64,000 nucleotides of DNA from Macrostomum lignano (Eukaryota), in the NCBI GenBank assembly GCA_002269645.1, contig NIVC01001493.1, positions 1-64,000 on the forward strand. Reading direction: 5' to 3'. Below the pieces are notes generated by a model. The model did not search any database. It worked only from the letters and a program-made list of their open reading frames with translations, and was not told the origin of the DNA. Both the position numbers and the translations under genes were made by a program. Within the stretch, counting starts at the first letter, position 1, and each line of letters starts with the position of its first letter. Shown piece after piece: positions 13,990 through 64,000 of this stretch.

Positions 13990-15822
13990 TGAACGCTTTA
14001 TTGAAGGGTATGCAATGGGTGCTGAATCGGATGCAATGGATGCTGAATCGGATGCAATGTGTGCTGAATCGGATGCAATGTGTGCTGAATCGGATTCAAT
14101 GTGTGCTGAATCGGATGCAATGGGTGCTGAATCGGATGCAATGTGTGCTGAATCGGATGCAATGGATGCTGAATCGGATGCAATGTGTGCTGAATCGGAT
14201 GCAATGTGGGATGCAATGTGTGCTGAATCGGATTCAATGTGTGCTGAATCGGATGCAATGGGTGCTGAATCGGATGCAATGTGTGCTGAATCGGATTCAA
14301 TGTGTGCTGAATCGGATGCAATGGGTGCTGAATCGGATGCAATGTGGGATGCAATGTGTGCTGAATCGGATGCAATGGGTGCTGAATCGGATGCAATGTG
14401 TGCTGAATCGGATGCAATGTGTGCTGAATCGGATGCAATGTGTGCTGAATCGGATGCAATGTGGGATGCAATGTGTGCTGAATCGGATGCAATGTGTGCT
14501 GAATCGGATGCGATGTGTGCTGAATCGGATGCAATGTGTGCTGAATCGGATGCAATGTGTGCTGAATCGGATGCAATGTGTGCTGAATCGGATGCAATGT
14601 GTGCTGAATCGGATGCAATGTGTGCTGAATCGGATGCAATGTGTGCTGAATCGGATGCAATGTGTGCTGAATCGGATGCAATGTGTGCTGAATCGGATGC
14701 AATGTGTGCTGAATCGGATGCAATGTGTGCTGAATCGGATGCAATGTGTGCTGAATCGGATGCAATGTGTGCTGAATCGGATGCAATGGATGCTGAATCG
14801 GATGCAATGGGTGCTGAATCGGATGCAATGGATGCTGAATCGGATGCAATGGGTGCTGAATCGGATGCAATGGGTGCTGAATCGGATGCAATGGGTGCTG
14901 AATCGGATGCAATGGGTGCTGAATCGGATGCAATGGGTGCTGAATCGGATGCAATGGGTGCTGAATCGGATGCAATGGATGCTGAATCAGATGCAATGTG
15001 TGCTGAATCGGATGCAATGTGTGCTGAATCAGATGCAATGTGTGCTGAATCAGATGCAATGAGTGCTGAATCGGATGCAATGTGTGCTGAATCAGATGCA
15101 ATGGGTGCTGAATCGGATGCAATGAGTGCTGAATCAGATGCAATGGGTGCTGAATCGGATGCAATGTGTGCTGAATCAGATGCAATGAGTGCTGAATCGG
15201 ATGCAATGGGTGCTGAATCGGATGCAATGGGTGCTGAATCGGATGCAATGGGTGCTGAATCGGATGCAATGGGTGCTGAATCGGATGCAATGTGTGCTGA
15301 ATCGGATGCAATGGATGCTGAATCAGATGCAATGTGTGCTGAATCGGATGCAATGTGTGCTGAATCAGATGCAATGTGTGCTGAATCAGATGCAATGAGT
15401 GCTGAATCGGATGCAATGTGTGCTGAATCAGATGCAATGGGTGCTGAATCGGATGCAATGAGTGCTGAATCAGATGCAATGGGTGCTGAATCGGATGCAA
15501 TGTGTGCTGAATCAGATGCAATGAGTGCTGAATCGGATGCAATGTGTGCTGAATCAGATGCAATGTGTGCTGAATCAGATGCAATGAGTGCTGAATCGGA
15601 TGCAATGTGTGCTGAATCAGATGCAATGAGTGCTGAATCGGATGCAATGGGTGCTGAATCAGATGCAATGAGTGCTGAATCAGATGCAATGTATGCTGAA
15701 TCAGATGCAATGGGTGCTGAATCGGATGCAATGTGTGCTGAATCGGATGCAATGGGTGCTGAATCAGATGCAATGAGTGCTGAATCGGATGCAATGGGTG
15801 CTGAATCAGATGCAATGGGTGC
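13990..15822. repeat. 21-bp minisatellite (ATGTGTGCTGAATCGGATGCA), ~87 copies
   Basis: Tandem array; produces stop-free repetitive ORFs in several frames. Confidence 0.97.
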
Positions 15823-32800: not shown

Positions 32801-33653
32801 TGATGAGACACCTGGGATAGGTGATAAGACACCTGGGATAGATAATGAGACACCTGTGATAGGTGATGAGACACCTGGGATAGATGATGAGACACCTGGG
32901 ATAGGTGATGAGACACCTGGGATAGATGATGATACACCTGGGATAGGTGATAAGACACCTGTGATAGATGGTAAGACACCTGGGATAGGTGATAAGACAC
33001 CTGTGATAGGTGATGAGACACCTGGGATAGGTGATAAGACACCTGTGACAGGTGGTAAGACACCTTGGGGATGAGACACCTGGGGGAGGGAGATAAGACG
33101 CTTAGGGGAGGGAGATGAGATACCTGGGGTATTGAGGTAGGGTAAATTACCTGGACAAGGGGTGAGATACCTGTTAATAGTAAATTACGTTAGCAATGAC
33201 GCTAAGCTGCGCTGCTAATAGCTATGCTCAATATTTATTTAACAGGTACTTCGAGCCCGTCTGACACTGCCAACGGAGGAGGGCAAAGCCATCCGCGACT
33301 CGGTCAAGAGGCTGCTGTCCCAGTCCAGCAGTCTCTGCCAGATGCCCTGGGACAGCCTGGTGGATCCCAGCCAACACCCGCAGTTCCGTCAGCTTCCAAG
33401 CAGCAGTGCGGCCTTTTTAAACGCTTGCTCTGCCTGGTGCTGGCGGGCCGTCTGCTCCAGCCTCGCCAGGGTGACCATCGTTCCGGCCGAGGAGGGCGCC
33501 CCGTTTCGTCAGGAGTTGCACCGCTGCGAGCTGGGGCTGGGCGTCGGCCGGCCAGTCGCCTGCTGCCTGTGGCCAATGCTGAGGCAGGGCCGCACCGTGA
33601 TCTGCAAGGCTCTGGTGCAGACCGCGCCGGTGCTGGGACCTATTCGCGATTGA
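29832..33653 (+). CDS. MIEAP/SPATA18 C-terminal-domain-like protein with putative N-myristoylation, 3 exons, 432 aa
   Basis: Exons 29832-30374, 31191-31538 and 33246-33653, all phase 0 with GT-AG. N-terminus MGNNHS (MGxxxS). C-terminus ACSAWCWRAV...FRQELH...VACCLWPMLRQGRTVICKALVQT resembles the MIEAP pattern (W...F....H/Y....V.WP.L....V..KG.V). The domain call is from memory. Confidence 0.7.
30420..31170. repeat. 22-bp minisatellite (CCTAACCTCCCAAATCCCAATC) filling intron 1 of the MIEAP-like gene
   Basis: About 33 near-perfect units containing no G. Confidence 0.97.
31620..33125. repeat. 21-bp minisatellite (GATGAGACACCTGGGATAGGT) in intron 2 of the MIEAP-like gene
   Basis: Tandem units with higher-order blocks. 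Confidence 0.95.
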
Positions 33654-35030: not shown

Positions 35031-35528
35031 TGGTGCAAGGCATGTCTAGAATTGCATGAGACTTCCTTCCGACTTTAAATAAAAGTGCAGATGCACTAAA
35101 AGAGGAGTCGCAACTTTTAGGGTAATTATTTAAATTGAAGCTTTAAATTATATTGGTGTCATAATTTAGAAAATTGGATCCGATGAGGTAAAAACCTTTG
35201 CCAAAGCCGACTCCTTTTGCCATCGCCAAAAGACCAATCATTTTGTTGAATAATGGCAATAATTGGATTTTCTTGCAAACCACCTTTAATAGGAGCTCAG
35301 GTGTCGAAAATTTCAGTGCTCTTCTGTCTCCTCTTGCTTTTTTCAATTATTTTTCAACCAAACACCAGAGGCTACTCAAGTTTATTCATTTCCGGTTCGT
35401 TCTCTAATCAAACGCTTCCGCTGTCTGTCCCGTGGAATCTGCCATCGAAGGTTTCCATATAAAGACAAGCTTCATCTCTTTTGGCTCAGAAAGGCTGCAG
35501 CCATCCTCAATCATCGACTTGGTCCGAG

Positions 35529-36719
35529 ATGAGCAACTCAACCGTACGGGAGGTTCCCGTCGAAGGGCAAGCGGCATTCGGGCCTAGCCTGCCCGGCATT
35601 GCCTTCGTACTGCAGGTTTTCTTCTATTACGTCATCTTGGCTAATGGTATTCTAGGCTTGCTAAACAACACCTTGTCGAGCCTGGTGTTCACCATCTACC
35701 GAACCAAGTTCCCGCCCTCCTGTCTGTACTTTATCGTCCTATCCGTGACCGATTTCTTTTGCTGTTGGTTTCTGTGCATCCTGTTCTGGACTGGCGAGTC
35801 GCTGCGACAGATGGGTGGTCGGAGCTTCGATCTGTTCACCTTGAGCCTGTCCAGCTGCAAGAGTCTGCGCTACCTGCAGCAGATCTTCATCAGCACGGGG
35901 GCCTACTCAGTGGTGGTGCTGTCATACGAGCGGGCCGCTTGCCTTGTATCACCAGTTCGATTTCTGAGCTTCTTCACGGTCCGGCGTCGCGTTGCCATGC
36001 TATCGAGCATCGCGCTCTTTGCTGCCGTCCTCTGGACGCAAACTTTTATTGCTTTCGACATTCGGTCTCGATTTGTTAATAGCAGCCTAACGGGTTGCTA
36101 TCCGAGTACCAAAGAGTCTGTAAGCTTCATCTTAGCTTACTCGTACGAGATGATATTCGTGAACTATACTGTGCCGGCTATACTGATTTTGGGTGGCAAC
36201 ATTCTGGCCCTGATTGGATACCGAATGAACCGAATCAAGCAGGCTCAGCAGAGCGAGCTTCCAGCACCTCTGGCGGGTAGCGCAGTCGCGAATCGTCAGG
36301 CGGTTGAGAATGGAGTAAAGGTTACCATGGTGATGCTGTCAATGCAATATCTAATCCTAAACATGCCCTACTCTATCAGTTGGCCTCTATTTAGCTTTCT
36401 AAAGTACTTTAAGTACGAACTAACGGATCCAACGATGTTTTACAACGCCTCCTACCTAAATTCCATCTTCATGGTTTTGTCTACCGTCAACTATTCCGTA
36501 AACTTCTATTTTTATCTGTTCAAAGTGAGGCGATTCAGGCGCTACCTGCTGCGTATCCTCGGCTTTAATCGCTGCGAATTTCGGTGCAACAGACGTAGCA
36601 GCTCCAGCGGAAACGTTAATGCGGCACCTGTGGTTGCTGGGGCCGCCTGTCGATCGGGTGGCTGCGGATCTGGTATCGATCCATTAGCTAGGAGTGGCAA
36701 CTATCGCCCGAGATTTTAG
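35529..36719 (+). CDS. Intronless class A (rhodopsin-like) GPCR, FMRFamide/peptide-receptor-like, 396 aa
   Basis: Seven hydrophobic segments. N-terminal NST glycosylation site, GLLNNTLS in TM1, LSVTD in TM2, SYERAACLVSP (DRY-like), NMPYS in TM6 and NYSVNFYFY in TM7. First ATG at 35529. Confidence 0.88.
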   Translation: MSNSTVREVPVEGQAAFGPSLPGIAFVLQVFFYYVILANGILGLLNNTLSSLVFTIYRTKFPPSCLYFIVLSVTDFFCCWFLCILFWTGESLRQMGGRSFDLFTLSLSSCKSLRYLQQIFISTGAYSVVVLSYERAACLVSPVRFLSFFTVRRRVAMLSSIALFAAVLWTQTFIAFDIRSRFVNSSLTGCYPSTKESVSFILAYSYEMIFVNYTVPAILILGGNILALIGYRMNRIKQAQQSELPAPLAGSAVANRQAVENGVKVTMVMLSMQYLILNMPYSISWPLFSFLKYFKYELTDPTMFYNASYLNSIFMVLSTVNYSVNFYFYLFKVRRFRRYLLRILGFNRCEFRCNRRSSSSGNVNAAPVVAGAACRSGGCGSGIDPLARSGNYRPRF

Positions 36720-38616: not shown

Positions 38617-41600
38617 ATGGCCAGTCCGCCGCCTCGTCAATTTAAATACTGCAGCTGTTTTTTGACGGACAACTATTTCCTGGAAGAGCTGGGCATCCAT
38701 CTGAATCTGCGTAGCCTGACAGATGACAGCTCGAAATTGTCCAACAGCGAGCTGGAACAGCTTATAGCTAAGGCGAGTGAGATTTCAATTGTCAAATTCA
38801 AATTTTGTTATCTTAAATAACATATTTTTTATTTCTCGAATGGCTTACCTATTCAAAATCCCATAGCTCAGGTTTAAATACCTTAAATCCTATGCCATAA
38901 ATACCATATTCTATATCTCAAATTCTATTACTTCTATTATTCCAATCCCATACCCAAAATTCAAAATCCCAAGTCCCATATCCCAAATCCCATACTCCAA
39001 ATCCCATACCCCGACCCCATAATCCAAATCCCATACCCCAATCTCATACCCCAAATTCTATACCCCAAATCCCATAACTCAAACACCATATCCCTAATCC
39101 CATACCTCAGATAGATCCGATACCTCATTTCCCATACCTTACCCCAATCCCATACCCCACATCTCATATTCCAATCACATACCCCTAATCCCATGCCCCA
39201 ATCCCATATCTCAAATCCCATAGACTAATCCCAAAACTAAAAATCCCATACCCCATAACCAAAAAGTCCCATACCCGATAACCAAAAATCCCATACCCCA
39301 TAACCAAAAATCCCATACCCCATAACCAAAAATCCCATACCCGATAACCAAAAATTCCATACCCCATAACCAAAAATCCCATACCCGATAACCAAAAATC
39401 CCATACCCGATAACCAAAAATCCCATACCCCATTACCAAAAATCCCATACCGGATAACCAAAAATCCCATACCCCATAACCAAAAATCCCATACCCGATA
39501 ACCAAAAATCCCATACCCCATAACCAAAAATCCCATACCCGATAACCAAAAATCCCATACCCGATAACCAAAAATCCCATACCCGATAACCAAAAATCCC
39601 ATACCCCATTACCAAAAATCCCATACCGGATAACCAAAAATCCCATACCCCATAACCAAAAATCCCATACCCGATAACAAAAAATCCCATACCCCATTAC
39701 CAAAAATCCCATACCCGATAACCAAAAATCCCATACCCCATAACCAAAAATCCCATACTCGATAACCAAAAATTCCATACCCCATAACCAAAAATCCCAT
39801 ACCCGATAACCAAAAATCCCATACCCGATAACCAAAAATCCCATACCCGATAACCAAAAATCCCATACCCCATTACCAAAAATCCCATACCCGATAACCA
39901 AAAATCCCATACCCGATAACCATAAATCCCATACCCCATAACCAAAAATTCCATACCCGATAACCAAAAATCCCATACCCCATAACCAAAAATCCCATAC
40001 CCGATAACCAAAAATCCCATACCCGATAACCATAAATCCCATACCCCATTACCAAAAATCCCATACCGGATAACCAAAAATCCCATACCCCATAACCAAA
40101 AATCCCATACCCGATAACCAAAAATTCCATACCCCATAACCAAAAATCCCATACCCGATAACCAAAAATCCCATACCCGATAACCAAAAATCCCATACCC
40201 GATAACCAAAAATCCCATACCCGATAACCAAAAATCCCATACCCCATTACCAAAAATCCCATACCGGATAACCAAAAATCCCATACCCCATAACCAAAAA
40301 TCCCATACCCGATAACCAAAAATTCCATACCCCATAACCAAAAATCCCATACCCGATAACCAAAAATCCCATACCCGATAACCAAAAATCCCATACCCCA
40401 TTACCAAAAATCCCATACCCGATAACCAAAAATCCCATACCCGATAACCATAAATCCCATACCCCATAACCAAAAATTCCATACCCGATAACCAAAAATC
40501 CCATACCCCATAACCAAAAATCCCATACCCGATAACCAAAATCCCATATCCCATTACCAAAGATCCCATACCTCATAACCAAAAATCCCATACCCCATAA
40601 CCGAAAATCCCATACCCCATAACCAAAAATCCCATACCCCATAACCGAAAATCCCATACCCCATAACCAAAAATCCCATACCCCATAACCGAAAATCCCA
40701 TACCCCATAACCAAAAATCCCATACCCCATAACCAAAAATCCCACACCCCCACCGCAGTCCTGGCTCGAGCGTCATCCCAGCGCGGACCGAGCTGCCCTG
40801 CAGCAGCAGCTCCGCCGCCTACAAGCGGAGGGGATTTTCTCCCGTTGTGCCGCCGAACTGCTAGCCGAGCAAACCCGTCGCGAGTCCGAGGATGAAGCGA
40901 GCTTTGCTAGGGAGGCTGAGATTGCCAGCCGGCATGTGTACAAGAATCCGGACCTTTTTAGCTATGGCGAGGTGTCGCAGGTAATTGCCGAATAATTAAA
41001 CAATTATAACTTGGGATTTTCGTATTTTCCTTTTCCAATCCAAGCGTGAGTCGCTTGAGTAGCTTGGTTTTACCCTTGGTATGACTCATTATCCTGCCAG
41101 AAAGAGTCAGTAACTATCCGCATTCTGCGCAAATTTGCAATTGGGCATTAAAATACTAATATTTCTACTGTAAGTAAGTAACATGGGTCATTTTTTAATT
41201 GTATGAAGTTTCAACTTATTATATAAAGCGTTTTTGTCTTGCATTGCGCAATTTTTTTTCATTTCAGCGGTCCATGTTTGATCCCAGATTTGTGGCCATT
41301 GTTGAGGCTTGTCGCCATGGCAACAAAGCGACACCTGGAGTGTCTATGGATGATCTGAGACAATACGGATTAAGGCAGGTGTTAGAGGTAAATTCCTTTA
41401 CAAAACGCGACTACAGTTAGAAATTTTTGCCAGACTTGCAAAAAATAAGTGATATTTGTTTAAAATGAATTCAAATACAAAATAGAGTTTAGTTTAGGAT
41501 ATAGTTCAGTTAGTATAGGGTTTAGTTTAGGCCATTGGGTTTAGGATAGGGTTTGGTTTAGGTTTATTTTAGGATAAGGTTTAGTTCAGGATAAGGTTTA

Positions 41601-42506
41601 GTTTAGTGTAGATTCAGTTCAGAAAATAGGTTTTAGATTTAGATTTAAAGTTTGAGTTAGATTAGGGTTCAAAATAGGGTTGAAGCAAAGTTTAGGTTTA
41701 GGTTAGGGTTAAGTTTGGCAGTCAATCTGTAGCTGTCAAATATGCGCACCTATGCAGCAGCCTTCCTTTGAATTCAACAGTTCAGAATGTACATGCAAAT
41801 ACGGTGTCCTATCAGTCAACTCAGTGCTAGAAGTCAGTCTCCCATCTCCATCTCCCAGGACGTGTACTTTCTGCCAGTCTTCTCCCCATCCTTCTGCTCC
41901 GCCCTGCGCTCCGAGTTCAGCCACTTCTCCGACCATTCGCCAGTGAAAACCGGCCGGCCGAACACCATGAACCGGGACGGCCTCCTATTGGACGAGCTCC
42001 GACCAATCAGAGCCTGGCTAGACCGGCTTCGATCCGATTGGCTGCAGCCGCTGGTTGATTGTCTGCTTCCGGAAGCAGCAAACGGGGCTAAATTGGACTC
42101 GCACCGGGCCTTCACAGTTCGCTACCTGCCTGGCAGGGACACCGGCCTCGGCTATCACTATGACAACGCTGAGGCCACTCTAAACGTGTGTCTAACCGAT
42201 TCCAATAGTTACCATGGCAACGCCTTGTACTTTGGCGATCTAGTCGAGCCCAAGCTTGGCGGCGGCTGTCCTTTGATCTCGCCGGAGCGGCTGGAAGCCT
42301 TGCCCGGTGTTGAGCAGCGCCTGGGCTGGGGGCTGCTGCACCCCGGACTGCGGATGCATGGGGTTCGCCGCCTGCTTGAGGGGACCCGTCTGAATCTCAT
42401 CCTGTGGCTGCGGGCCAGCCGCTTGAGGAACCGTCTCTGCCCGCGCTGCTGGCGCCGGCCTGAGTGCACCCGGTTGAGCCAGCGCTACGGTGACGGCATG
42501 ACCTGA
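38617..42506 (+). CDS. OGFOD2: 2-oxoglutarate/Fe(II)-dependent oxygenase domain-containing protein 2, 4 exons
   Basis: Exons 38617-38772, 40759-40980, 41268-41387 and 41859-42506, all phase 0; the first intron is GC-AG. Motifs CSCFLTDN, GRPNTMN, LDSHRAFTVRY, HYDNAEATLNV (HxD), MHG (distal H), RLNLILWLRAS..RN.LCP.C and GDG. Confidence 0.93.
38940..40750. repeat. 22-bp minisatellite (CCCATACCCSATAACCAAAAAT) filling OGFOD2 intron 1
   Basis: Tandem array ending 8 nt before the acceptor at 40758. Confidence 0.97.
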
Positions 42507-51520: not shown

Positions 51521-52866
51521 ACAGAACTGACTGACAGAACGATAAGCGCGTGCATTGCCTACCAAATTTTACGGTCTTGTTTTTACTAATAAAGCCCTTT
51601 TTGTTTATATATGCATAAAATTTCAAACATTGCGTACAACATACAAAATGTTGTATTGTGGCAAAGTCGCTAGGCTTGCGTTTCTGTAATGACGAGATAC
51701 AGAGATTTAGCTAATTTGTTCTAATAAATACGAGCGTGTACAACTGCCAAATTTATCTAAACCAAGCGAGACGAAGCTTTACAAAAATGAAGCTCGCGTT
51801 AAAGATTAGATGAGGCATACAGGATCGTGGCTTTTGTGCATGAGCCTGCTAAGCGTTGTTTCTGAACTATTTTCGCTCCGTTTCTCAGTGCCAGTGTGTC
51901 CAGTCTACAAGAATGTTGAATATAAATTAGGAATTCTGCAACTTAGCTATTAGAAAAAAAGGAAATCTATAAAGCATTCAGCATTGCTTTCCTGCCTACT
52001 AAAAGTAGCGTAAAATGTATAATTAGCCTGTTTGTATTATGAATAGCTGGGGCCAGTTTTATGAAGGAAGTACAAGTTTCTCACTATTGATACAGCAGAA
52101 AGAGGAGTGACAAAGGGGATGTCAAAATGGAGCCCGAGACATTCGGTCTGGACTTCTTTACGCCAGTCTCTTTTTTATTTGGAGTCAAATAGCTCCCGTT
52201 ATGCCTAAATGATGGGATTGGCTTTTTTCTGGAGTCTCAAGTTCAAATGAAATCCCCATCTATCTCGTTTCTCCCCATAAAGATCCCCAAATGTTTCAAA
52301 GGTTTTAGGCGAAGTCGATTCGGTTGTCGGTTTCATAAAACAAAACGTTGATTGCAAGTAAATTGATTACAATTGACTACAATTTGTTACAATTGATTGT
52401 ATTGATTACGTATAACCGCACCTCTGAAGTCCGTTAGTTCGATTCTGCTACATTCGCAACCAATCTGAGGCGCATTCTCGCAAATTAGCCTGGATCTTAT
52501 TTACTAAAACATCAGGAGCAGCTAATTAGAGTGCAGCGGTAGGGGCGAGGCTGGTTGCTAGCCATGCCATGCAGTAGCTTTTCATTCGCTATTTTTCGCA
52601 CGGATGCCTGCAACGCAGTCTCGCGGGAAATGGATTATTTTTGCATTGAAGACAGAAAAATGGGTCGGATAGGCGTTGAGTTCGGCAATTATGGGCTAGC
52701 CAGGCATTCTGAATAGTTGGGTAAAACTTCCCCGTGACGAAGCATTAGCGATGCCATTGGCTGGGCTATGCTGCTTCGTGAGCATACAAAAGTCCCGTTT
52801 GGCTATGCCCTCATCCTTACTTTGACTCCATCTATCCGAACACAACGAATAGTTAGCATAGCATTG

Positions 52867-55800
52867 ATGCTACTAATAGTAGTTGCAGTCTTGGCTTTAC
52901 TGCTGCCGGCAGCACGAACTGCCATGTTGGATGCGGTGACCGCTTCCGCTTGCAGGCCCGGCTCAGTGGCTCTGGCGGCAGCAGTCAGTGCGGGAAGCTG
53001 CGAATCTGGCAACCTGCCAGTAGCCGGCTGGGAGACTCGCTTCCTGCGCGCTTTCGCTGCGTTTCACGCCGCAGAGCTGGCGAACGCGGATCCCAGCTTG
53101 GCGTTCGCGAACGCGTCAGGGCCAGCGGGATATCCGGCTTTGGGCCTCGTCTACCGGGACACCTGCTGGCGCGAGGACGTTGCGGCAGAGTTTGTCCGAC
53201 GCCTGGAGCCGCACTGGCTCTATCCGGATGTGTACACTGGCAACTCCAGCGGCCTCTGCCGTCTGACAGGTCAGCCCGGCTCTCGGCCGCTGTACTTCGT
53301 CCTGGGCCTTGTCGGCGGCTGGTACAGCTCGGAGACGCGAACAATGTCCCGCGTAGTGCAGCTTTCCGGCCTGCCGCAGGTGGCCACGGAGGCGAGCAGC
53401 GATCAGTTCAGCGACAAGTCCGAGTTCCCCAACCTGTTCAGGCTGGTGCCGCCGGACTCTTATCAGTCGCGCGTGCTGGCCGACGTTATTCTGCACTTCG
53501 GCTGGACCTACGTTGGGCTGGTCTACGCAGACACCGCCTACGGCAGCGGTCTGGCTTTGAAGCTACGAGAGGCGCTGCAGCCGACCGGAGTCTGTCTGGC
53601 TTTTTCCGTCGCAATGAACAAGTTGGTCACGAAGGATGTTATGCTAGCAAAGCTCAGAGCTGCTCAGGCCATGCGAGTTCTGGTTGTGGTGGAGCAATTG
53701 TACAACCTGCCGAAAGATGTTCTGGAGTACATTGGCAGCAGAGGCATTCTGTTGATTCTGACAGACATCAACTTTACTGGCTTTAAGCACTACAGTAAAT
53801 ACGCGCTCACTGTATCCTTCAAGAGATTTTCTGCGCCAAGTATGATGGAAAAGTACCTGAACTTCACCTACTCTGACTTTCTTCGCTACCCCTATGGTTT
53901 AGAGACTGCCAGAGCGCTTTTCAACTGTTCTGTCTGCACAAAGTGTTGTCAGTTGAACTCAAGCATAAGAGCTGGTTCAGTCTCCAAGTTCAACGCATCG
54001 GCAGTGATAGTTCCCGCTGCCAGAACTATTGATGCTGTACACTCCATCGCTAGAGCGATTAGCCAGGTAGCTACAGGACCAAACTGCTCAGCATATTTTC
54101 GCAATCGATTCGACGAGCCATTAATAAGCTGCATGACAAGCGACAAGTTGCTGTCAGCGTTGCGTTCTCAAAACTTCACCGGGCTGGCTGGAACTGTTGG
54201 CTACGACTCACACGGAGACGGCCTGCCGAACTACGTGGTTGAGCAGCAGGTGTCGGATGCTGATTCTGACACTCGAGTGGTTGCATCCTGGCAGGCTGGC
54301 AGTGGGTTAACTGTGCACTCGGACAGGCTTGCCTGGCCTGCTGTCCCCCAGTCCCGGTGCAGCGAGCCCTGCTCTGCCGGCCAGTACCGCATGGATCTGG
54401 ACATCTGCTGCTGGCTCTGTCGGGACTGTCGAACCAACGAAATTGTATCGAGCAACGGCAGTCTTTGTCTGGCTTGTGAAGCTTTCCAATGGCCGTCGGC
54501 GGACAGACTGAGCTGCAGTCCACTGCCCGTCACCCAGCCTGGCGGAGCTGTCGCGATCTACGCTATCAGCGGAGTCGGTTTCGTCTCTGCCGTCACCTCC
54601 GCAGGCTTTGTTGTCTGGCATCGCGGAGATCAGCTGTTGAAGGCGTCTTCGATAGAGCTGAGCCTATGCAGTCTGGCGGGAATCGCAGTGGGTTACGCCG
54701 ATGCGTTCGCCTTCATGTGGCCTCCGTCAACGCTGCTGTGCAACCTCAAAAACTGGCTGTTCCACCTTAGCCTGACGCTGGCTTACGCCAGCCTGTTTGT
54801 CAAGACCGCCAGAATCTACCGGGTGTTTGCGAATTCAATGAGCGGTAGATCGAAAACCAGGTTCACGAGTCGCGCGTCTGTGCTCGCTGGAACCTTAATT
54901 ATTCTTATGGTTCAGGTGAGTAAATATCGTTCAGATTTTTACGGATATTCAAGCAACAATGATTCATTAATAGTTTTAGCTCCATTTTGCGGGGACTGCC
55001 CTCACACTGCACTCTCTGCCCCAGGTGGCTCATGACTCACTCTCTCGCCCAAACTTTTTATAATTTACTAAGTCTCAATCATCACGCATCACTTCACCTC
55101 CACCCCAAATACGAGTATCTTCGTTGTTTCCCCCATCTGTGGACATCAACCTATCAACTATCGACAATGATTGGACAATACTGTACATTGTGTATAAGCC
55201 GCAAGCCTCTAAGATTCATTAAGACAAAATATGCTTGCCCCTGAGCACTGTAACAAACGCTTTCGGAAGGCAAACGTAGACTTCACACATTTCTCGATGG
55301 TTACCCAGATACGACCGTAGCTATCATTGGTAGTTCCAGTTCGAGCTCTAGGAAAAATAGTGCGCCCTTAACATTTTTCTGAATCCTCTGAGCGCCATTT
55401 GCATTCGCAGGCAGTCATTCTGACGGTGCTGACGTTGCTACAACCGATCGAGGTTATCCAGCTGCAGACGTCTGCTGTTCAGTCGTCAGACAGCTCAAAA
55501 CCGGCTTCAGTTGAAGAGGACTGCAACTTCGTCCTTCAGATGACCGGCTGGGCTCCCCTAGCCTTCAATTTGATTCTGGTCCTAGCCACATCCGGGCTGT
55601 CGTTGCGAACCAGACACCTGCCGGAGAACTTTCACGACACCAAGTGCATCCTGGCGAGCTCAGCGTGCGCCGTGTTCCTCTGGACTGCCTTCGTGCCGGC
55701 CCTGCTGACTGCAGGACAGCTCGCCACGCAGTCCCTGCTCCTCTGCTTTGCTCTTCTATCAACAAACACCCTCGCCCTGGCGGTGCTGTTCGGGCCGAAG

Positions 55801-56477: not shown

Positions 56478-57592
56478 TTTAGCACCAGGGGCTTTAGCAC
56501 CAGGGGCTTTAGCACCAGGGGCTTTAGCACCAGGGGCTTTAGCACCAGGGGCTTTAGCACCAGGGGCTTTAGCACCAGGGGCTTTAGCACCAGGGGCTTT
56601 AGCACCAGGGGCTTTAGCACCAGGGGCTTTAGCACCAGGGGCTTTAGCACCAGGGGCTTTAGCACCAGGGGCTTTAGCACCAGGGGCTTTAGCACCAGGG
56701 GCTTTAGCACCAGTGGCTTTAGCACCAGGGGCTTTAGCACCAGAGGCTTTAGCACCAGGGGCTTTAGCACCAGGGGCTTTAGCACCAGGGGCTTTAGCAC
56801 CAGGGGCTTTAGCACCAGGGGCTTTAGCACCAGGGGCTTTAGCACCAGGGGCTTTAGCACCAGGGGCTTTAGCACCAGGGGCTTTAGCACCAGGGGCTTT
56901 AGCACCAGGGGCTTTAGCACCAGGGGCTTTAGCACCAGGGGCTTTAGCACCAGGGGCTTTAGCACCAGGGGCTTTAGCACCAGGGGCTTTAGCACCAGGG
57001 GCTTTAGCACCAGGGGCTTTAGCACCAGGGGCTTTAGCACCAGGGGCTTTAGCACCAGGGGCTTTAGCACCAGGGGCTTTAGCACCAGGGGCTTTAGCAC
57101 CAGGGGCTTTAGCACCAGGGGCTTTAGCACCAGGGGCTTTAGCACCAGGGGCTTTAGCACCAGGGGCTTTAGCACCAGGGGCTTTAGCACCAGGGGCTTT
57201 AGCACCAGGGGCTTTAGCACCAGGGGCTTTAGCACCAGGGGCTTTAGCACCAGGGGCTTTAGCACCAGGGGCTTTAGCACCAGGGGCTTTAGCACCAGGG
57301 GCGCCAGCACCAGAGGCGCCAGCACCAGGGCGCCAGCACCAGGGGCGCCAGCACCAGGGGCGCCAGCACCAGGGGCGCCAGCACCAGGGGCGCCAGCACC
57401 AGGGGCGCCAGCACCAGGGGCGCCAGCACCAGGGGCGCCAGCACCAGGGGCGCCAGCACCAGGGGCGCCAGCACCAGGGGCGCCAGCACCAGGGGCGCCA
57501 GCACCAGGGGCGCCAGCACCAGGGGCGCCAGCACCAGGGGCGCCAGCACCAGGGGCGCCAGCACCAGGGGCGCCAGCACCAGGGGCGCCAGG
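56478..57592. repeat. Bipartite 15-bp minisatellite: (GCTTTAGCACCAGGG)~55 then (GCGCCAGCACCAGGG)~19
   Basis: Near-perfect arrays with a sharp switch at 57300/57301. Confidence 0.97.
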
Positions 57593-58304: not shown

Positions 58305-58880
58305 TCTACAACAACAACAGAATACGCAGTTAGCGTCACAGGGCGCGCTTCAAGGCCCCCGCCGGTAGGGTGCCTGCAGCGTTAGCAGCAGCTCTTTCTG
58401 CACCGGCTCTGGGCAGTACTACTCGGCGCGGATGATGTGGCCTGCCACCTGGAGTCGCCGACGGCGCAACAGGTCGCTTGGACAGACCAGGCCGGCGCGG
58501 TGATACAAAGCCGCGTTGGTCACTCGCTCGATCGTAGCCGATCTTGAAGGCGGCGAGCAGCAGGCCAGCGTGCGCCGCGTCAACTTGTTGCTCGAGCGAC
58601 TCCGTCACCGTCCAGGTCTCGGCGTTGTACAGCAGGACGGTCTCGATCACCGCCTGAAACAACGCCGCCCTGTGGCGGTCAGGTAAGCCCTCAGACTGCA
58701 TGACTACCTTCACAGGCAAGCCCGCGGCGACACCGCAAATTCTCGCGGACGCGGACGCCGGGAACCAGACCGCCGAGGTAGACGAACTGCTGACAACGCG
58801 GAAGCTCTGTCGCCTGTCCATCAGCGCCTCGGCACAAAATCGCAGCCTCGATGTTCGTCCGGCATGCAGAGCAGGGGATT
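58305..58880 (-). mobile_element. 3' remnant of an RTE-clade non-LTR retrotransposon
   Basis: LPRCQQFVYLGG, FQAVIETVLLYNAETWTVT and (shifted frame) LLRRRRLQVAGHIIRA; 3' (TGT)n tail. Confidence 0.8.
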
Positions 58881-59864
58881 ATGGAAACACGATGGCTCTT
58901 ATTATAAGAAAAAATTAAAAGCTCTGGAAATGTTAATAATGAAAAATCCCGCACAGGTGTCCATAGTCACCTGTTGTCATCTTTTGAAGTTGCCGACTAC
59001 GTCGGGGTGATGACGGAATGCTTGAGAGACCAGCTGAGGATGTTCAGCAGTTGAGGCTTCATCAGCGAAACTCAAAAAATTCGCAATAGGGTACACAAAG
59101 TCACCTGGTGCCACCTGTTGAAGGTCCAGAAGCTCCGCCTGGGTGAAGGCTAGTAGCCAACAAAGTCAGAGCTGATGCAGACGCATGCGGTCGACGTGCT
59201 GATGAAATTTGGAGACTTGGCAAGGCTGCAGTGAGGCGCAGTGCTGATCGGCGCATGCAGGGGTGTACTGAATACACTAGCGCTTATGGAAAAAATCCGA
59301 CCTTCTGGCAGAATCGTTGAATATCTCGACGGTCCGAAGGGCTGGCGACTTGATACTTGTTTGAGAAGGTGCGCGACAAAAACTTAGCCCGTGTGCCTGC
59401 GTTGCTCCGTTCTAGCGCAGCAAAAATGTCTGGGGAATCCTCAGCCCCGGTAGTTCTACTGTCAAGCCATTCTTTCATCTGTCACTTCAAAATCGCTCAA
59501 AGTTCTCGAAAACTGAATGAAAACTGGATTGGGTGGCTTATACTCGTAAACAGGTGGCTTACAGGTTTCGCATCTCGAGTTGGCTTATCAACTTTTTTTC
59601 AATGAGTTTACATGGGGAAATATCCGACATGTTTGCGAACGATCATAGTTCGATCGTTTCAATTGTTTGACAAGAAGTTGACAGCGCCGCTGACAGATTG
59701 AAGCTTATAGTGACGACCGCCTACGCAAAGATTCGTGTCAGAATGGCTCAAGCCTATCAGGTGAACCAGGTGCAAAAAGTCTATATAAGAGAGAGATCTG
59801 TTCCAAGCCAAGCGTTCAATCAGTCCGAGGCAACTTCTAAGCGCGCCAAATCTGTTCAGCAAAA

Positions 59865-60491
59865 ATGTCCGCCGCCTGCAAAACCGCCCTCGTCGCGATC
59901 TTGATGCTCGCCAGTTTAATCTCACTGGGACTCGCCGCCAGTCATGCTGAACTGATGGAGCCGCCGGCTGCTGCAGTGGCCAAGTCCGGCATCCAATTCG
60001 CTAAAAGGATTCGCATGGACAGTGAGTCATACTTGAACTGGGAAGGCCAAACCCCCCCCCCTCCCAATAGAAAGTCAGGACCGAGGTGCAACCATGAGTG
60101 AACGGGGCTGCCTGTGTGTCAGAAAACGATAAAAAATGAAAGATAAGAGCTACAATTTCAATGAAAAAAGGACTATTAGAGACAGAAAGCTAGATAATGT
60201 ACAACGCGCTCGTGGAAAGTAAATAGCAGGAAGGCAGGAAGGCAGTACTAACCCTGGTGCAACGCCTTCGTCTGGTGTTCGTCTGACACGTGATACATCG
60301 TTTGACACCTTTACAATGTTGCCAGCGCCCCCCCCCCTCTCTTCACTCCGATTGCAGCTCACCGAGCATTCGTACCGTTCTGCACCTATCGTTGCGAGAT
60401 GCACTTTGGTAGGGAACGGGGCTGCGTCGGCTACGTCAATCAGAAGGAGGGCAACTGCCTGTGCGCCTGCCCCCGGCCTGCTGGCAACTGA
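59865..60491 (+). CDS. Secreted six-cysteine defensin-like peptide precursor, 2 exons, 96 aa
   Basis: Exon 1 59865-60021 (AAAAATG start, donor A|GTGAGT) and exon 2 60358-60491 (polypyrimidine tract + TTGCAG), phase 1 join. Protein: MSAACKTALVAILMLASLISLGLAASHA-ELMEPPAAAVAKSGIQFAKR-IRMDTHRAFVPFCTYRCEMHFGRERGCVGYVNQKEGNCLCACPRPAGN*. Confidence 0.8.
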
Positions 60492-60849
60492 TTAACCGAT
60501 TCGCCGTTGGCTGACAGCTCACCGGAAAATGCGCTTAAATGCTACGCACCGATTAATAGATATTTTCCGCACATTCCCAATTAGATATTTCTCGGCAAGA
60601 CTGAGAAGTTTTATCATTTACCATTTTAAAAGCAAGTTTGTAAGTTAATCAAATCAGCCAATGGACAGAAATATTCCGGACTAACTATAACCTACTACTG
60701 TACAGTAGAATGACTTGAGTTTAGTTTTTATTATTTTAACATCATCAACAATACAACATTCACTTACAGCGCATATGAAAGTGATTGCAGCTGTGTGATT
60801 GATAGCTGAAGTAGTGAAACTTCTTTGAGAGCTTCTTCACATATATTAA

Positions 60850-62338
60850 CAGAGATTCACAGAGATTCACAGAGATTCAAAGTGATTTACACAGATTCAC
60901 GAGATTTACAGAGATTCACATAGATTCACAGAGATTCACAGGGATTTACAGAGATTCACAGAGATTCAATGTGATTTATAGAGATACACAGAGATTCACA
61001 CAGATTCACAGAGATTCACAAAGATTCACACAGATACACAGAGATTCACAGAGATTCACAGAGATTCACAGAGATACACAGAGATTCACAGATTTTGTAT
61101 TAATAAGCAATGTTGGAAATCCAAACTTCCACTTTCTAAGAACCGCGTTTAGTTGAGAGGAAAATCGTTCTAAAATGAAAGCAGCAATGAAAAGCAACTG
61201 CAGTAAGAAATGACATCTAAGTAGTTACACGCGTAATTAAAGTGCTTAATTTACAAGCAGATTCGGAGCAACGGACGTCATTACCTTGACAACCACGATC
61301 CCTTCCGATCGAATTTCAGTCAGGAATGTAGCTCCGAACTCGTGACCTGTTTGAGGGCATCCTCAAATGAAAGTACAATTAACAATTGAAATTTCCGAAA
61401 GTCTATTGGGTGACACTTAATTAAATAAATGCGTGTGATTCGTTATTGAGTATCGATTAGAAAATAAGAATGTCTAACTAATATGAAAAAAATGTTCAAT
61501 CTATTAGTTACAGTGACAATGCAAATGTGCTTTAGTTATTAGCTGACCTATTTTTGGATTGCTACTGGAGCGACTGTATATAAATATGAATTAGCACCTT
61601 TGCTCCATGCAATGATGTTTTTAAAATGATGTTTCACTGCACGTTTCATAACAGAAATATATTGAATACTTAGCAATATACAGCTTACGTATATACGCTT
61701 GTACATTGTGATGGCTGTGAATCTCTGTGAATCTATGTGAATCTATGTGAATATTTGTGAATCTCTGTGAATCTCTGTGAATCTCTATAAATCACTTTGA
61801 ATCTCTGTAAATCCCTGTGAATCTCCGTGAATCTCTGTGAATCTCTGTGAATATCTATGAATCTCTGTGAATCTCTATAAATCACTTTGAATCTCTGTGA
61901 ATCTCTGTGAATCTCCGTGAATCTCTGTGAATCTCTGTGAATCTCTATAAATCACTTTGAATCTCTGTGAATCTCTGTAAATCCCTGTGAATCTCTGTGA
62001 ATCTCTATAAATCACTTTGAATTTCTGTGAATCTCTGTGAATCTCTATAAATCACTTTGAATCTCTGTGAATCTCTGTGAATCTCTGTGAATCTCTGTAA
62101 ATCTCTATAAATCACTTTGAATCTCTGTGAATCTATTTGAATCTCTGTGAATCTCTGTGAATCTCTGTGAATCTCTGTGAATCTCTATAAATCACTTTGA
62201 ATCTCTGTGAATCTCTGTGAATCTCCATGAATTTTTATGAACCTCTGTGAATCTCTATAAATCACCTTGAATCTCTGTGAATCTCTGTGAATCTCTGTGA
62301 ATCTCTGTAAATCTCTGTGAATCTCTGTGAATCTCTGA
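60850..62338. repeat. Inverted pair of 10-bp minisatellite arrays: (AGAGATTCAC)n 60850-61093 and (GTGAATCTCT)n 61715-62338
   Basis: Same unit and same variant block (AGATTCAAAGTGATTTA) in opposite orientations, ~620 bp apart. Confidence 0.92.
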
Positions 62339-62435
62339 GGTGCTTTTGGTTTTACTTTTAGAGAATTAACGGTAATTAACCTTGAGTCGTCGCTTCCGAT
62401 TGCAATCCCTAGAAAAATATACGCAGTAATTAAAG

Positions 62436-64000
62436 TCACAACTTTGTGCCAAAAGCTTCTACCAAAGTTTCATCATCCTGCTCAAAGTGCTCAAAGTTGT
62501 CCCTGCGGCAACAATCGCAGCAGTTGCAGTCTTTGTCGCCGCCTGTGTCACCATCGTCTTTGTCACGAACTTCTCCCTCTCCATCTTCTTCGCCGTCGCT
62601 CTCGTCATCGATGAGGCGCGTGATCGCCTCTTCGGGATCGAAGTTGGGACGTCGCAGCCTCGTCAACTGGTGCTGCTCGGTGCTGCTGGGCCGGCAGCTC
62701 AGGTCCAGCTGAGTGCAGAAGCTGCTCGGTTCGTAGGCCCGCGAGCGAACCAAGTCAAAGTTGATGCGACCTTTGAAGAACGGCGACCTGGCCAGACCGG
62801 ACAGGGAGACAATTCGCCTTTCCGGCAGCTTCTGCAGCAGCCGTTCGATGGTGTAGCGGCACTCCCAGGTGAGACTGGCCGGCGCCTCGAAGCTGTGCTG
62901 CCGGACCAGCTGGCGCATCTGGCGGCAGGTTGGCGCCGCGTGCAGCGGAAACTGCAACGAATGTCCATCAGCTTTGAAAGAATTTACAGCTGGTGAATTT
63001 GTATGCCAAGGACTACTTAAGTAGAAGGACGCGAAACTATGTTTCTGGGAAAATTTTAGGGAGGCAGGACTTTCCGAAAAAATACACTACGGAGATAGGA
63101 AGTTTCCATTTTTTCAGCACAAAAGTTGTTATTGCTTTCGATAGGAATTCTTAGCTGACTGTGTAACAATATGTGTAACAGAAATGATAAAATAGATTCA
63201 TAAAACCAAAGAGCCGAGCCGTGCACTTCTATTGGTCTTTAGGCCAATAGAATCCTAATTTTCTAAACGGAAAGCTCTATGAATATCAATAGAGCTACTC
63301 GTATAAGATTTTTTTATTAGAGGCAGGGGGGTTGTGTGCACCCTGGCGCACTTTAAGCGACATTGTCACACAACCGGCGAGAGGCATTACTGCCCATTCC
63401 GCCGACTCCCCTGAGCAGGCATACAAGCGCGCGGATACGTACGCAGGCACACACTCACACAGGAGTGTACAGCGGCCCTAACTTTATATTATCGTTAGGC
63501 ATGTACACTTCACTGCGCCTTGGGGGGTTGGCTCTCAAGGCCGTTAATTACACGAGCAGAGCCAAGCCGAGATTCCAATTCAGCCCCAAATTAATGTGAC
63601 TGCACTTGGAATCGAGCCTGGGTCGCTGGCCACCAGAGCCTGCGCTAGACCCCCTTACTCGTATAAGATAGGCAAAGCATATTAAAAGAATAACATTGGG
63701 TCTGTCTCCTATCGAAAGCAATAACAATTTTTGTGCTGAAAAATGATAGCTTCTTATCTCCGTAGAGCTAGAGCAGTCCTTTTTACAAATCCAAGAAATG
63801 TAGTTTCCCGTCCTTCTACTTTCGTAGTCCTTGAGTTTTACAAGTATATTAAATTTATAAAAGTATAGAGGCTTGGCAAGCGCATTTTGTTTAAGTTTAT
63901 GAAGCTCACCTTTCCAGTGACTAGGGCGTAGAACAGGATGCCCAGGGACCACCAATCGACGCTGTGATTGTACGGCCGGCCGCAGAGCATCTCAGGTGCT
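62436..64000 (-). CDS. RSKR: 3' part of an RSK-related (SGK494/RSKR-like) AGC kinase; last exon 62436-62951, penultimate exon 63910->64000 runs off the window
   Basis: [30 protein letters not shown]|GTGAGC splices in phase 0 to TTGCAG|FPLHAAP...[12 protein letters not shown]...SPFFKG (subdomains VIII-XI). Closest recalled match is RSKR (APEVLSGGPYNHAADWWSLG..LATGKFP). Confidence 0.8.
63310..63655 (-). mobile_element. SINE family 2 copy with 14-bp TSD in the kinase intron
   Basis: Near-identical to 45120-45483 apart from a short deletion in the tRNA head. TSD TACTCGTATAAGAT at 63296-63309 and 63656-63669. Confidence 0.92.

What the first reader, a model, noticed from the sequence alone, without database searches (positions are those of the whole stretch)
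59865..60491. Hidden two-exon gene for a secreted 6-Cys defensin/toxin-like peptide with an unusual cysteine framework
Seen: exon 2 is too short for the ORF track, but canonical splice sites join the two exons in phase to give a 96-aa precursor. It has a 28-aa hydrophobic signal peptide ending in SHA, a 20-aa propiece ending in dibasic KR, and a 48-aa mature peptide with C-x3-C-x9-C-x10-C-x-C-x-C. Known: CxxxC plus CxC is the hallmark of cysteine-stabilised alpha-beta defensins, macins and scorpion-type toxins, and C-x8-GNC fits the C(X3-9)GXC gamma-core. Inference: this is an antimicrobial, toxin or signalling peptide of a possibly undescribed family. The usual N-terminal CSab cysteine is absent and an extra C-terminal Cys (CxCxC) is present, implying different disulfide wiring.
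Basis: partly seen in the sequence, partly recalled or inferred. Interest (0 to 1): 0.8.

Follow-up and report, generated by a model that had tools for sequence, protein, structure and literature searches.

The report
Flatworm defensin-like secreted peptide gene
This is a real two-exon gene of the flatworm Macrostomum lignano, already in the public annotation, that encodes a small secreted six-cysteine peptide predicted to fold like an invertebrate defensin; that matters modestly, because flatworms have been reported to lack such peptides.

Summary
Exon 1 (59865-60021) joins exon 2 (60358-60491) through GT/AG sites in phase, giving a 96-aa precursor: signal peptide, propiece ending in KR, then a 48-aa cationic peptide with C-x3-C-x9-C-x10-C-x-C-x-C.

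The gene is not hidden. The window is Macrostomum lignano contig NIVC01001493.1, and the identical protein is GenBank PAA67319.1, from an RNA-seq-derived annotation. UniProt auto-names it [quoted passage not shown].

An old paralogue, Mlig034330, is 38% identical with saturated synonymous sites. It keeps all six cysteines, the KR site, the HFG and GCVGY.N motifs and the phase-1 intron.

AlphaFold2 gives both paralogues a helix carrying CxxxC plus a β-hairpin carrying CxC. The third and last cysteines face each other at the hairpin base.

No statistical test links the family to known defensins or toxins: Pfam, PDB HMM searches, hhalign and Foldseek were all non-significant. No relatives were found outside M. 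lignano.

Best reading: a lineage-restricted, defensin-like host-defence peptide in which the canonical N-terminal disulfide is replaced by a hairpin-base staple. Function is untested. A 2023 survey reported no CSαβ peptides in flatworms, which gives the finding moderate interest.

The parts
59782..59789 (+). TATA box (TATATAAG), 83 nt upstream of the ATG
   Evidence: Read from the sequence; position computed. Identical in all three genomic copies. The paralogue has TATAAAT at -109.
59865..60021 (+). Exon 1 (157 nt): start codon, signal peptide, propiece and the first 4 1/3 codons of the mature peptide
   Evidence: The gene start matches the public gene range.
59865..59948 (+). Signal peptide, residues 1-28 (MSAACKTALVAILMLASLISLGLAASHA)
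   Evidence: Kyte-Doolittle mean above 1.8 over residues ~4-24. Small residues at -3 and -1 (S, A), read from the sequence. SignalP was positive for the paralogue, with cleavage one residue earlier in the alignment, in Irvine et al. S5. The exact cleavage site here is inferred.
59949..60008 (+). Propiece, residues 29-48, ending in the dibasic K47-R48
   Evidence: K47 and R48 are invariant in alignment A1. Cleavage by a proprotein convertase is inferred.
60022..60357 (+). Intron, 336 nt, phase 1, GT...AG, with poly-C runs near both ends
   Evidence: The paralogue has a 228-nt phase-1 intron within one codon of the same position.
60358..60491 (+). Exon 2 (134 nt including TGA): the rest of the mature peptide, with all six cysteines
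   Evidence: Only one synonymous difference among the three genomic copies.
60009..60488 (+). Mature-peptide coding span, interrupted by the intron: IRMDTHRAFVPFCTYRCEMHFGRERGCVGYVNQKEGNCLCACPRPAGN (48 aa, pI 8.7, net charge about +3)
   Evidence: AlphaFold2 gives helix 9-21 and strands 28-32 and 37-41, pLDDT 76.

Best explanation
A small, TATA-driven, two-exon gene of the flatworm Macrostomum lignano encodes a prepropeptide.

Steps shown:
- The gene and its splice exist, and they match a transcriptome-derived public gene model.
- The precursor has a hydrophobic N-terminus and a conserved KR site.
- The six cysteines are conserved across an old duplication.

Steps inferred:
- The signal peptide (about 28 aa) directs the precursor into the secretory pathway. 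A proprotein convertase cuts after K47-R48 and releases a 48-aa, cationic (+3) peptide.
- The peptide folds as a cysteine-stabilised helix packed on a two-stranded β-hairpin. Cys13 and Cys17 on the helix bond to Cys38 and Cys40 on strand 2, the CxxxC/CxC motif of CSαβ defensins.
- The third bond, Cys27-Cys42, staples the base of the hairpin. It replaces the canonical bond between the N-terminal loop and strand 1.
- In Tarr's ten-cysteine array this reads C3-C8, C4-C9, C5-C10. That is the mollusc/nematode eight-cysteine defensin pattern minus the C2-C6 pair.

Most likely role (inference only): a secreted host-defence (antimicrobial) peptide of a family so far seen only in M. lignano.
For: Gene and splice:
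- Searches show the splice sites and frame.
- The protein is identical to PAA67319.1, and the annotated gene range is identical to the finding.
- The Mlig_3_7 annotation was built from RNA-seq and transcript assemblies (PMC5730564).

Conservation:
- Paralogue P0005 was found by phmmer against 1.84 billion representatives (E = 2.7e-4).
- It keeps all six Cys, KR, HFG, GCVGY.N and G.C.C.C, and the phase-1 intron.
- In the mature part pS is 0.64 against pN 0.42. The duplication is therefore old and the protein has been constrained.

Fold:
- Two independent single-sequence AlphaFold2 models have the same topology. They have pLDDT 76 and 82, and the two sequences are 47-49% identical.
- Both hairpins have a 4-residue turn, which puts the third Cys opposite the last Cys.
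- ASABF (2d56) is rank 3 of 350,542 PDB chains for the paralogue model.
- hhalign against eight-Cys CSαβ peptides gives P = 0.002.
- UniProt names the protein by the PROSITE invertebrate-defensin profile.

Host-defence role:
- Net charge about +3 and pI 8.7 in both paralogues.
- The paralogue is scored AMP-like by 54.5% of predictors in Irvine et al. 2023, S5.
Against: - No significant sequence or structure match to any defensin or toxin family. Pfam gave no Defensin_2, Toxin or Macin hit even at E <= 10. PDB phmmer and hmmsearch found nothing relevant. hhalign against Defensin_2 members gave Prob 0.4% and against eight-Cys members 12.9%. Foldseek gave E > 0.8 for everything.
- The canonical C2 cysteine, part of the definition of the CSαβ fold (PMC5116183), is absent.
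- AlphaFold2 on single short Cys-rich sequences may reproduce a memorised motif.
- No expression, induction or activity data were found.
- A net charge of +3 is modest for an antimicrobial peptide.
Confidence: 0.5

Rival explanations
1. The gene and the defensin-like fold are as above, but the peptide is not antimicrobial. It would be a signalling peptide, a reproductive (seminal-fluid or egg-associated) peptide, or an ion-channel-directed toxin or repellent. CSαβ scaffolds have been recruited to each of these roles in other organisms.
For: Sequence alone cannot separate antimicrobial from toxin CSαβ peptides (PMC5116183). The charge is only about +3. The prepropeptide with dibasic processing is equally typical of hormones. 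The family is lineage-restricted and fast-evolving, as are many reproduction-related genes of Macrostomum (PMC7336406 abstract).
Against: There is no KCXN motif at the third Cys, which one search gives as an indicator of K+-channel toxin activity: the sequence is RGCVGY here and AGCVGY in the paralogue. Neither gene ID appears in the supplements of the reproduction-related RNA-seq study, but that is weak evidence because ID schemes differ. M. lignano is not known to be venomous (own knowledge).
Confidence: 0.25
2. A real secreted six-cysteine peptide that is not a CSαβ relative. The CxxxC...CxC pattern and the predicted helix-hairpin would be convergent or a prediction artefact, and the fold, wiring and function would be of an undescribed kind.
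For: All statistical membership tests failed. The defining C2-C6 bond cannot form because C2 is absent. HMM and BLAST searches by Irvine et al. found no CSαβ peptides in 33 flatworm species, including this assembly. There are no homologues outside M. lignano.
Against: Two independent AlphaFold2 models agree on a CSαβ-type topology with cysteines in the right places. ASABF and a plant defensin appear among the Foldseek hits. UniProt names the protein by the PROSITE profile. The gamma-core-like C-x8-GxC is conserved.
Confidence: 0.2
3. Not a functional gene: a chance ORF and splice combination, or a decaying duplicate.
For: The ORFs are very short. No canonical AATAAA or ATTAAA lies within 500 nt downstream. 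The three copies are too similar (about 99% including the intron) to show selection among themselves.
Against: The gene model is transcript-derived. Cysteines, the processing site and the intron phase are conserved across a paralogue with saturated synonymous sites. All six genomic copies of the two paralogue groups have intact reading frames.
Confidence: 0.03

Closest known systems
Eight-cysteine CSαβ defensins of molluscs and nematodes (MGD-1, Cg-Def, ASABF/ABF; Tarr array C2-C6, C3-C8, C4-C9, C5-C10)
   Same: - CxxxC on a helix and CxC on the last strand.
- An extra Cys just after CxC that bonds to a Cys lying between the helix and strand 1 (C5-C10), matching the predicted Cys27-Cys42 staple.
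- A 'C-x-G-Y' stretch after that Cys: RCGGYC in MGD-1, GCVGYV here (sequences recalled, then verified as family members).
- ASABF is the best defensin hit in Foldseek, and hhalign gives P = 0.002.
- Secreted precursors.
   Different: - The C2-C6 pair is absent; V31 sits where C6 would be.
- The last Cys is at +2, not +3, from C9.
- The helix-to-Cys loop is 9 residues rather than 4-6.
- No significant sequence similarity, and hhalign places the third Cys on C6 rather than C5, so the C5/C6 assignment is unsettled.
Arthropod/insect-type six-cysteine defensins (Pfam PF01097 Defensin_2; PROSITE invertebrate defensins profile)
   Same: Six cysteines, nominal pairing 1-4, 2-5, 3-6, the CSH motif, a cationic mature peptide and a prepropeptide with a dibasic site. 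UniProt applies the PROSITE profile name.
   Different: The N-terminal cysteine before the helix is missing and an extra one follows CxC, so the third disulfide is in a different place. There is no PF01097 hit even at E <= 10, although five verified members score 19-63 bits. hhalign gives Prob 0.4%.
Mytilins (mussel CSαβ peptides, e.g. mytilin B)
   Same: A CxCxC run on the last strand, with GxC immediately before its first Cys (GRCYCKC against GNCLCAC). [quoted passage not shown] The spacing from the preceding Cys is similar, 11 against 10.
   Different: Mytilin has eight Cys. Its first CxCxC Cys bonds to an N-terminal Cys, and a fourth C-terminal Cys bonds to C5. If the flatworm peptide were aligned that way, the leftover pair (Cys27-Cys38) would be about four residues apart along the predicted hairpin, which is geometrically implausible. 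Neither flatworm peptide gave a Pfam Myticin-prepro hit.
ASABF-6Cys-alpha (nematode six-cysteine variant)
   Same: A precedent for a CSαβ-family peptide with a non-standard set of six cysteines that lacks C2 (PMC5116183).
   Different: It keeps C3-C6, C8 and C9 and lacks C10, whereas the flatworm peptide keeps a C-terminal extra Cys. There is no detectable sequence relationship.
Short-chain scorpion K+-channel toxins (Pfam Toxin_2)
   Same: A CSH motif on a helix/hairpin scaffold of similar size.
   Different: An N-terminal Cys is present in the toxins. The flatworm peptide has no KCXN or functional-dyad motif and no Pfam hit.

Membership tests
CSαβ (scorpion toxin-like / cis-defensin) superfamily | Cysteine-stabilised helix motif: CxxxC ... 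CxC (Tarr C3, C4, C8, C9) | tested here: met
   C61-x3-C65 and C86-x-C88 in the precursor. Invariant in the paralogue.
CSαβ (scorpion toxin-like / cis-defensin) superfamily | Third disulfide C2-C6, linking a cysteine N-terminal to the helix with strand 1. According to Tarr 2016 this bond 'completes the CSαβ fold'. | tested here: not met
   There is no cysteine between the KR site and CxxxC in either paralogue. The third Cys must pair with the extra C-terminal Cys instead.
CSαβ (scorpion toxin-like / cis-defensin) superfamily | An α-helix followed by an antiparallel β-sheet, with the helix cysteines facing the last strand | tested here: inconclusive
   AlphaFold2 single-sequence models give helix 9-21 with strands 28-32/37-41 (pLDDT 76), and helix 2-19 with strands 25-30/35-40 (pLDDT 82). 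This is a prediction only. Foldseek was not significant, with ASABF at rank 3 at E = 1.5.
CSαβ (scorpion toxin-like / cis-defensin) superfamily | Gamma-core motif (GXC with a C at 3-9 residues) | tested here: met
   C-x8-G-N-C here and C-x8-G-T-C in the paralogue. However, the GXC cysteine is the first of CxCxC (as in mytilin), not C6.
Arthropod defensin (Pfam PF01097 Defensin_2) and related Pfam families (Toxin_2, Toxin_3, Gamma-thionin, Myticin-prepro, Antimicrobial25, Macin) | Score above the family's gathering threshold | tested here: not met
   None of these families hit at E <= 10. Positive controls of ten recalled CSαβ peptides hit their families.
Invertebrate defensins (PROSITE profile PS51378) | Profile score above cut-off | not testable with these tools
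   Only indirect evidence: UniProt/UniRef names P0001, P0002, P0005 and P0007 after this profile. P0006, which differs by three residues, is named 'Uncharacterized'.
Solved CSαβ structures (PDB) | Significant sequence or profile similarity | tested here: not met
   phmmer gave 0 hits at E <= 10. The profile gave only an Rhs protein and oxalyl-CoA decarboxylase at E about 1. hhalign gave Prob 0.4% and 12.9%.
Secreted prepropeptide (general) | N-terminal signal peptide and a dibasic processing site conserved among relatives | tested here: met
   Hydrophobic core at residues ~4-24 with S-H-A at -3..-1. KR is invariant. SignalP was positive for the paralogue in Irvine et al. S5. SignalP was not run here.

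The most novel reading that the evidence does not exclude
This is the first CSαβ-type (cis-defensin) peptide family in Platyhelminthes, overturning the published conclusion that flatworms lack them. It uses a three-disulfide array not described for the superfamily (C3-C8, C4-C9, C5-C10). That would show that the supposedly defining N-terminal C2-C6 bond can be lost if a hairpin-base staple is kept.
Probability: 0.4. Interest if true: 0.55.

Novelty: new variant of a known kind. Interest (0 to 1): 0.4.

Why it matters
Irvine et al. 2023 (PMC10414684) searched 33 flatworm species, including this assembly. They concluded that flatworms encode no CSαβ peptides, and called that absence surprising given how widely the superfamily is distributed.

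If these M. lignano peptides are true CSαβ derivatives:
- The gap would come from divergence beyond HMM reach rather than from gene loss.
- An early-branching, free-living and genetically tractable flatworm would offer a model for studying defensin-type immunity.
- The cysteine array would be a natural experiment on which disulfides the scaffold needs, which is relevant to peptide engineering.

If they are not CSαβ, they are simply one more lineage-specific cysteine-rich secreted peptide.

Tried and rejected
- **Paralogues in the window:** tblastn of the precursor found only the gene itself.
- **Homologues outside M. lignano:** the word-indexed search, full phmmer against 1.84 billion representatives, a search with the paralogue (timed out) and a metagenome scan found nothing beyond the two M. 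lignano paralogue groups. The profile search with A2 returned no candidates at all, not even the query, so it was uninformative (one search was a parameter error).
- **Family assignment:** Pfam gave only noise, YacG and Sha_B_N at E about 0.02. PDB sequence and profile searches found nothing. hhalign was not significant, and neither were two Foldseek PDB searches.
- **Expression data:** neither gene ID occurs in any indexed full text, nor in the stored supplements of five M. lignano papers. In Irvine et al. S5 only the paralogue was found, and that file is truncated.
- **Selection among the three copies:** they are about 99% identical including the intron, so the comparison is uninformative.
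- **Shared promoter motifs between paralogues:** one 9-mer was shared against 0.94 expected by chance, which is nothing.
- **Other readings of the locus:** the minus-strand ORFs and the unspliced 78-aa ORF have no Pfam support, and there is no Rfam family in 58500-62500.
- **Mytilin-type wiring (Cys27-Cys38):** rejected because it does not fit the predicted hairpin register.

Full report
**1. The observation**

- An ATG at 59865, with A at -3, opens a 157-nt exon ending ...ATG GAC A|GTGAGT.
- A 336-nt intron ends in a pyrimidine-rich tract and ...GATTGCAG|CT.
- A 134-nt exon runs from 60358 to the TGA at 60489-60491.
- The join is in phase (291 nt) and gives MSAACKTALVAILMLASLISLGLAASHA / ELMEPPAAAVAKSGIQFAKR / IRMDTHRAFVPFCTYRCEMHFGRERGCVGYVNQKEGNCLCACPRPAGN.
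- A TATATAAG box lies at 59782-59789.
- The exons are 59-61% GC and the intron 49%, and GC3 of the CDS is 70%.

**2. Identity of the locus**

The 96-aa product is identical to GenBank PAA67319.1, 'hypothetical protein BOX15_Mlig020375g2' of Macrostomum lignano. M. lignano belongs to Platyhelminthes, Macrostomorpha.

The gene is recorded on contig NIVC01001493.1 at 59865-60491. The window is therefore the first 64 kb of that contig, and the public gene range equals the finding.

Gene models of this assembly (Mlig_3_7) were derived from RNA-seq and transcript assemblies using StringTie, TACO and TBONE. Transcripts at least 95% identical share a name prefix (PMC5730564). The splice therefore already has transcript support, although I could not inspect reads myself.

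UniProt/UniRef names the protein 'Invertebrate defensins family profile domain-containing protein'. The gene is not hidden, and an automatic defensin label already exists.

**3. Copies and paralogues**

- Two further genomic copies (g1 and g3, loci L003 and L004) are about 99% identical to the window over exons, intron and flanks.
- The only CDS differences are L13F and P33L in the signal and pro regions, plus one synonymous change in exon 2. The mature peptide is identical in all three.
- This fits the known recent polyploidy of the DV1 line and says nothing about selection.
- No second copy lies in the window.

A full phmmer scan of 1.84 billion representative proteins found only one other cluster: P0005, 90 aa, 38% identical, E = 2.7e-4. 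This is M. lignano Mlig034330, again present in three copies.

Its mature part, VFYFHTVFRYCIRRCRQHFGVTAGCVGYLNMPLGTCDCVCSNYP, has exactly the same framework, C-x3-C-x9-C-x10-C-x-C-x-C. The invariant positions are KR, H, F, C..RC..HFG...GCVGY.N...G.C.C.C.

Its gene (L001 5001-5501) also has two exons, split by a 228-nt phase-1 intron. Given a one-residue indel, that intron lies within one codon of the same position.

Synonymous sites between the two groups are saturated (pS 0.64-0.80), while pN in the mature part is 0.42. The duplication is old and the peptide has been maintained.

Nothing was found outside M. lignano.

**4. Anatomy and predicted structure**

- The N-terminus has a basic residue (K6), a hydrophobic core of about 19 residues, and S-H-A at -3..-1.
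- In Irvine et al. (S5), SignalP was positive for the paralogue, with cleavage one alignment column earlier.
- KR is invariant.
- Both mature peptides have pI 8.7 and a net charge of about +3.

AlphaFold2, run on single sequences, gave the following.

| Peptide | pLDDT | Helix | Strands |
|---|---|---|---|
| Window peptide (48 aa) | 76 | 9-21 (holds C13, C17) | 28-32 and 37-41 (hold C38, C40) |
| Paralogue (44 aa) | 82 | 2-19 | 25-30 and 35-40 |

In both models a four-residue turn sets the hairpin register so that the third Cys (C27 / C25) lies directly opposite the last Cys (C42 / C40).

The only wiring compatible with that register is I-IV, II-V, III-VI. This means the classical helix-to-strand pair plus a cross-strand staple at the hairpin base. 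The alternative register (helix to the last two Cys, with C27-C38) would need a bond across about four residues of strand.

**5. Comparison with known families**

In Tarr's ten-cysteine reference array (PMC5116183), C3, C4, C8 and C9 form the cysteine-stabilised helix motif. C2-C6 'completes' the CSαβ fold, and mollusc/nematode peptides add C5-C10.

The flatworm peptide has the helix motif, lacks C2, and has an extra Cys after C9. The most economical description is C3-C8, C4-C9, C5-C10, which is an MGD-1/ASABF-type array minus C2-C6. 'GCVGYV' lines up with 'RCGGYC' of MGD-1, so V31 replaces C6. Mytilins share the CxCxC run and the GxC just before it, but their wiring does not transfer to this hairpin.

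These are resemblances, not proof. Every statistical test failed.

| Test | Result |
|---|---|
| Pfam, both peptides, E <= 10 | No defensin, toxin or macin family; ten control CSαβ peptides hit theirs |
| PDB phmmer and profile search | Nothing relevant |
| hhalign vs five Defensin_2 members | Prob 0.4% |
| hhalign vs eight-Cys peptides | Prob 12.9%, P = 0.002, third Cys aligned to C6 rather than C5 |
| Foldseek vs PDB, window peptide | No defensin in the top 50, all E > 1 |
| Foldseek vs PDB, paralogue | ASABF (2d56) rank 3, E = 1.5, TM 0.44; plant defensin rank 33 |

I therefore file the peptide as 'works like / looks like a CSαβ defensin'. I do not file it as a demonstrated member. One defining feature, the C2-C6 bond, was tested and not met.

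**6. Literature**

No paper in the library describes a Macrostomum defensin.

Irvine et al. 2023 (PMC10414684) searched 33 flatworm species by BLAST and HMM, including Mlig_3_7. They state that flatworms do not encode CSαβ peptides, and they call this absence surprising.

Their algorithmic pipeline nevertheless lists the paralogue BOX15_Mlig034330g2/g3 as flatworm AMP-like peptide no. 149. It was SignalP positive, was called AMP-like by 54.5% of predictors, and was set aside at the 'Same genome' step. The window's gene was not in the stored, truncated part of that file.

So the family has been seen twice by automatic means, once by the PROSITE label and once by AMP predictors. It has not been recognised in print as defensin-like, and it has never been tested.

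**7. Mechanism and rivals**

Best explanation (confidence about 0.5): a secreted, KR-processed, cationic peptide with a cysteine-stabilised helix-hairpin fold that acts in host defence.

| Rival | Confidence |
|---|---|
| Same scaffold, other role (signal, reproductive, toxin). The K-C-x-N toxin indicator is absent, but nothing else discriminates. | 0.25 |
| A convergent or mispredicted fold of an otherwise unknown family | 0.2 |
| Not a functional gene. Effectively excluded by the transcript-derived model and paralogue conservation. | 0.03 |

Function cannot be settled without expression and activity data. I looked for such data in five supplement sets without success.

**8. Surroundings**

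- No other feature overlaps the gene. Minus-strand and unspliced ORFs have no Pfam support, and there is no Rfam match in 58.5-62.5 kb.
- Upstream, no gene is called within 10 kb. Downstream, a protein kinase gene lies on the minus strand from about 62436.
- The gene is followed by a 10-nt satellite array at 60836-61092, and the same unit appears inverted at 61715-62337.

**9. Verdict**

The gene is real and the peptide is defensin-like, but it is already annotated and auto-labelled, and family membership and function are unproven.
- Novelty: a new variant of a known kind, if the fold prediction holds.
- Interest is moderate (0.4). The main value is as a counter-example to the reported absence of CSαβ peptides in flatworms, and as an unusual disulfide array in a transgenesis-capable model.

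Noticed in passing
window 60836-61092 and 61715-62337: A 10-nt satellite (TTCACAGAGA, about 26 copies) starts 345 nt after the peptide gene's stop codon. The same unit recurs as its reverse complement (about 62 copies) some 620 nt further on, forming an inverted pair of arrays. All three genomic copies of the gene carry the start of the first array.
   Followed up: partly
window 1-58300 (e.g. 14010-15822, 31623-33084, 39230-40750, 56478-57586): The window is packed with minisatellites of 10-43-nt units: 52 Tandem Repeats Finder rows at score >= 100. Many of the long 'ORFs' listed mechanically lie inside these arrays.
   Followed up: no
window 11298-13058 (-), 52768-55035 (+), 35481-36719 (+), 5578-6192 (+), 41787-42506 (+): Long uninterrupted ORFs with clear Pfam domains: a DEG/ENaC-type sodium channel (ASC, E = 1e-63); a class C GPCR (ANF_receptor + NCD3G + 7tm_3); a rhodopsin-type GPCR at exactly the gathering score; a GOST seven-transmembrane fragment; and an OGFOD2-like fragment. 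There is no functional link to the peptide gene.
   Followed up: partly
window 62436 to the window end (-): The nearest annotated neighbour is a 492-aa protein kinase gene on the opposite strand (Pkinase / PK_Tyr_Ser-Thr). The same neighbour follows the other two copies of the peptide gene, so the duplicated block extends beyond the gene.
   Followed up: no
protein P0003 (UniRef100_A0A1I8I6D2, 400 aa): An older gene model ('Apple domain-containing protein') contains residues 1-87 of the g1/g3 precursor fused on both sides to unrelated sequence. It looks like a mis-spliced prediction from the earlier assembly. P0004 (56 aa, ENA) sits in the same 90% cluster but looks unrelated.
   Followed up: no
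window 60053-60063 and 60328-60337: Poly-C runs just inside both ends of the intron differ in length among the three genomic copies by 1-3 bases. These are the main differences between the copies in the intron.
   Followed up: no
window 60492-61000: No AATAAA or ATTAAA lies within 500 nt downstream of the stop codon. The polyadenylation signal and the 3' end of the transcript were not identified.
   Followed up: partly
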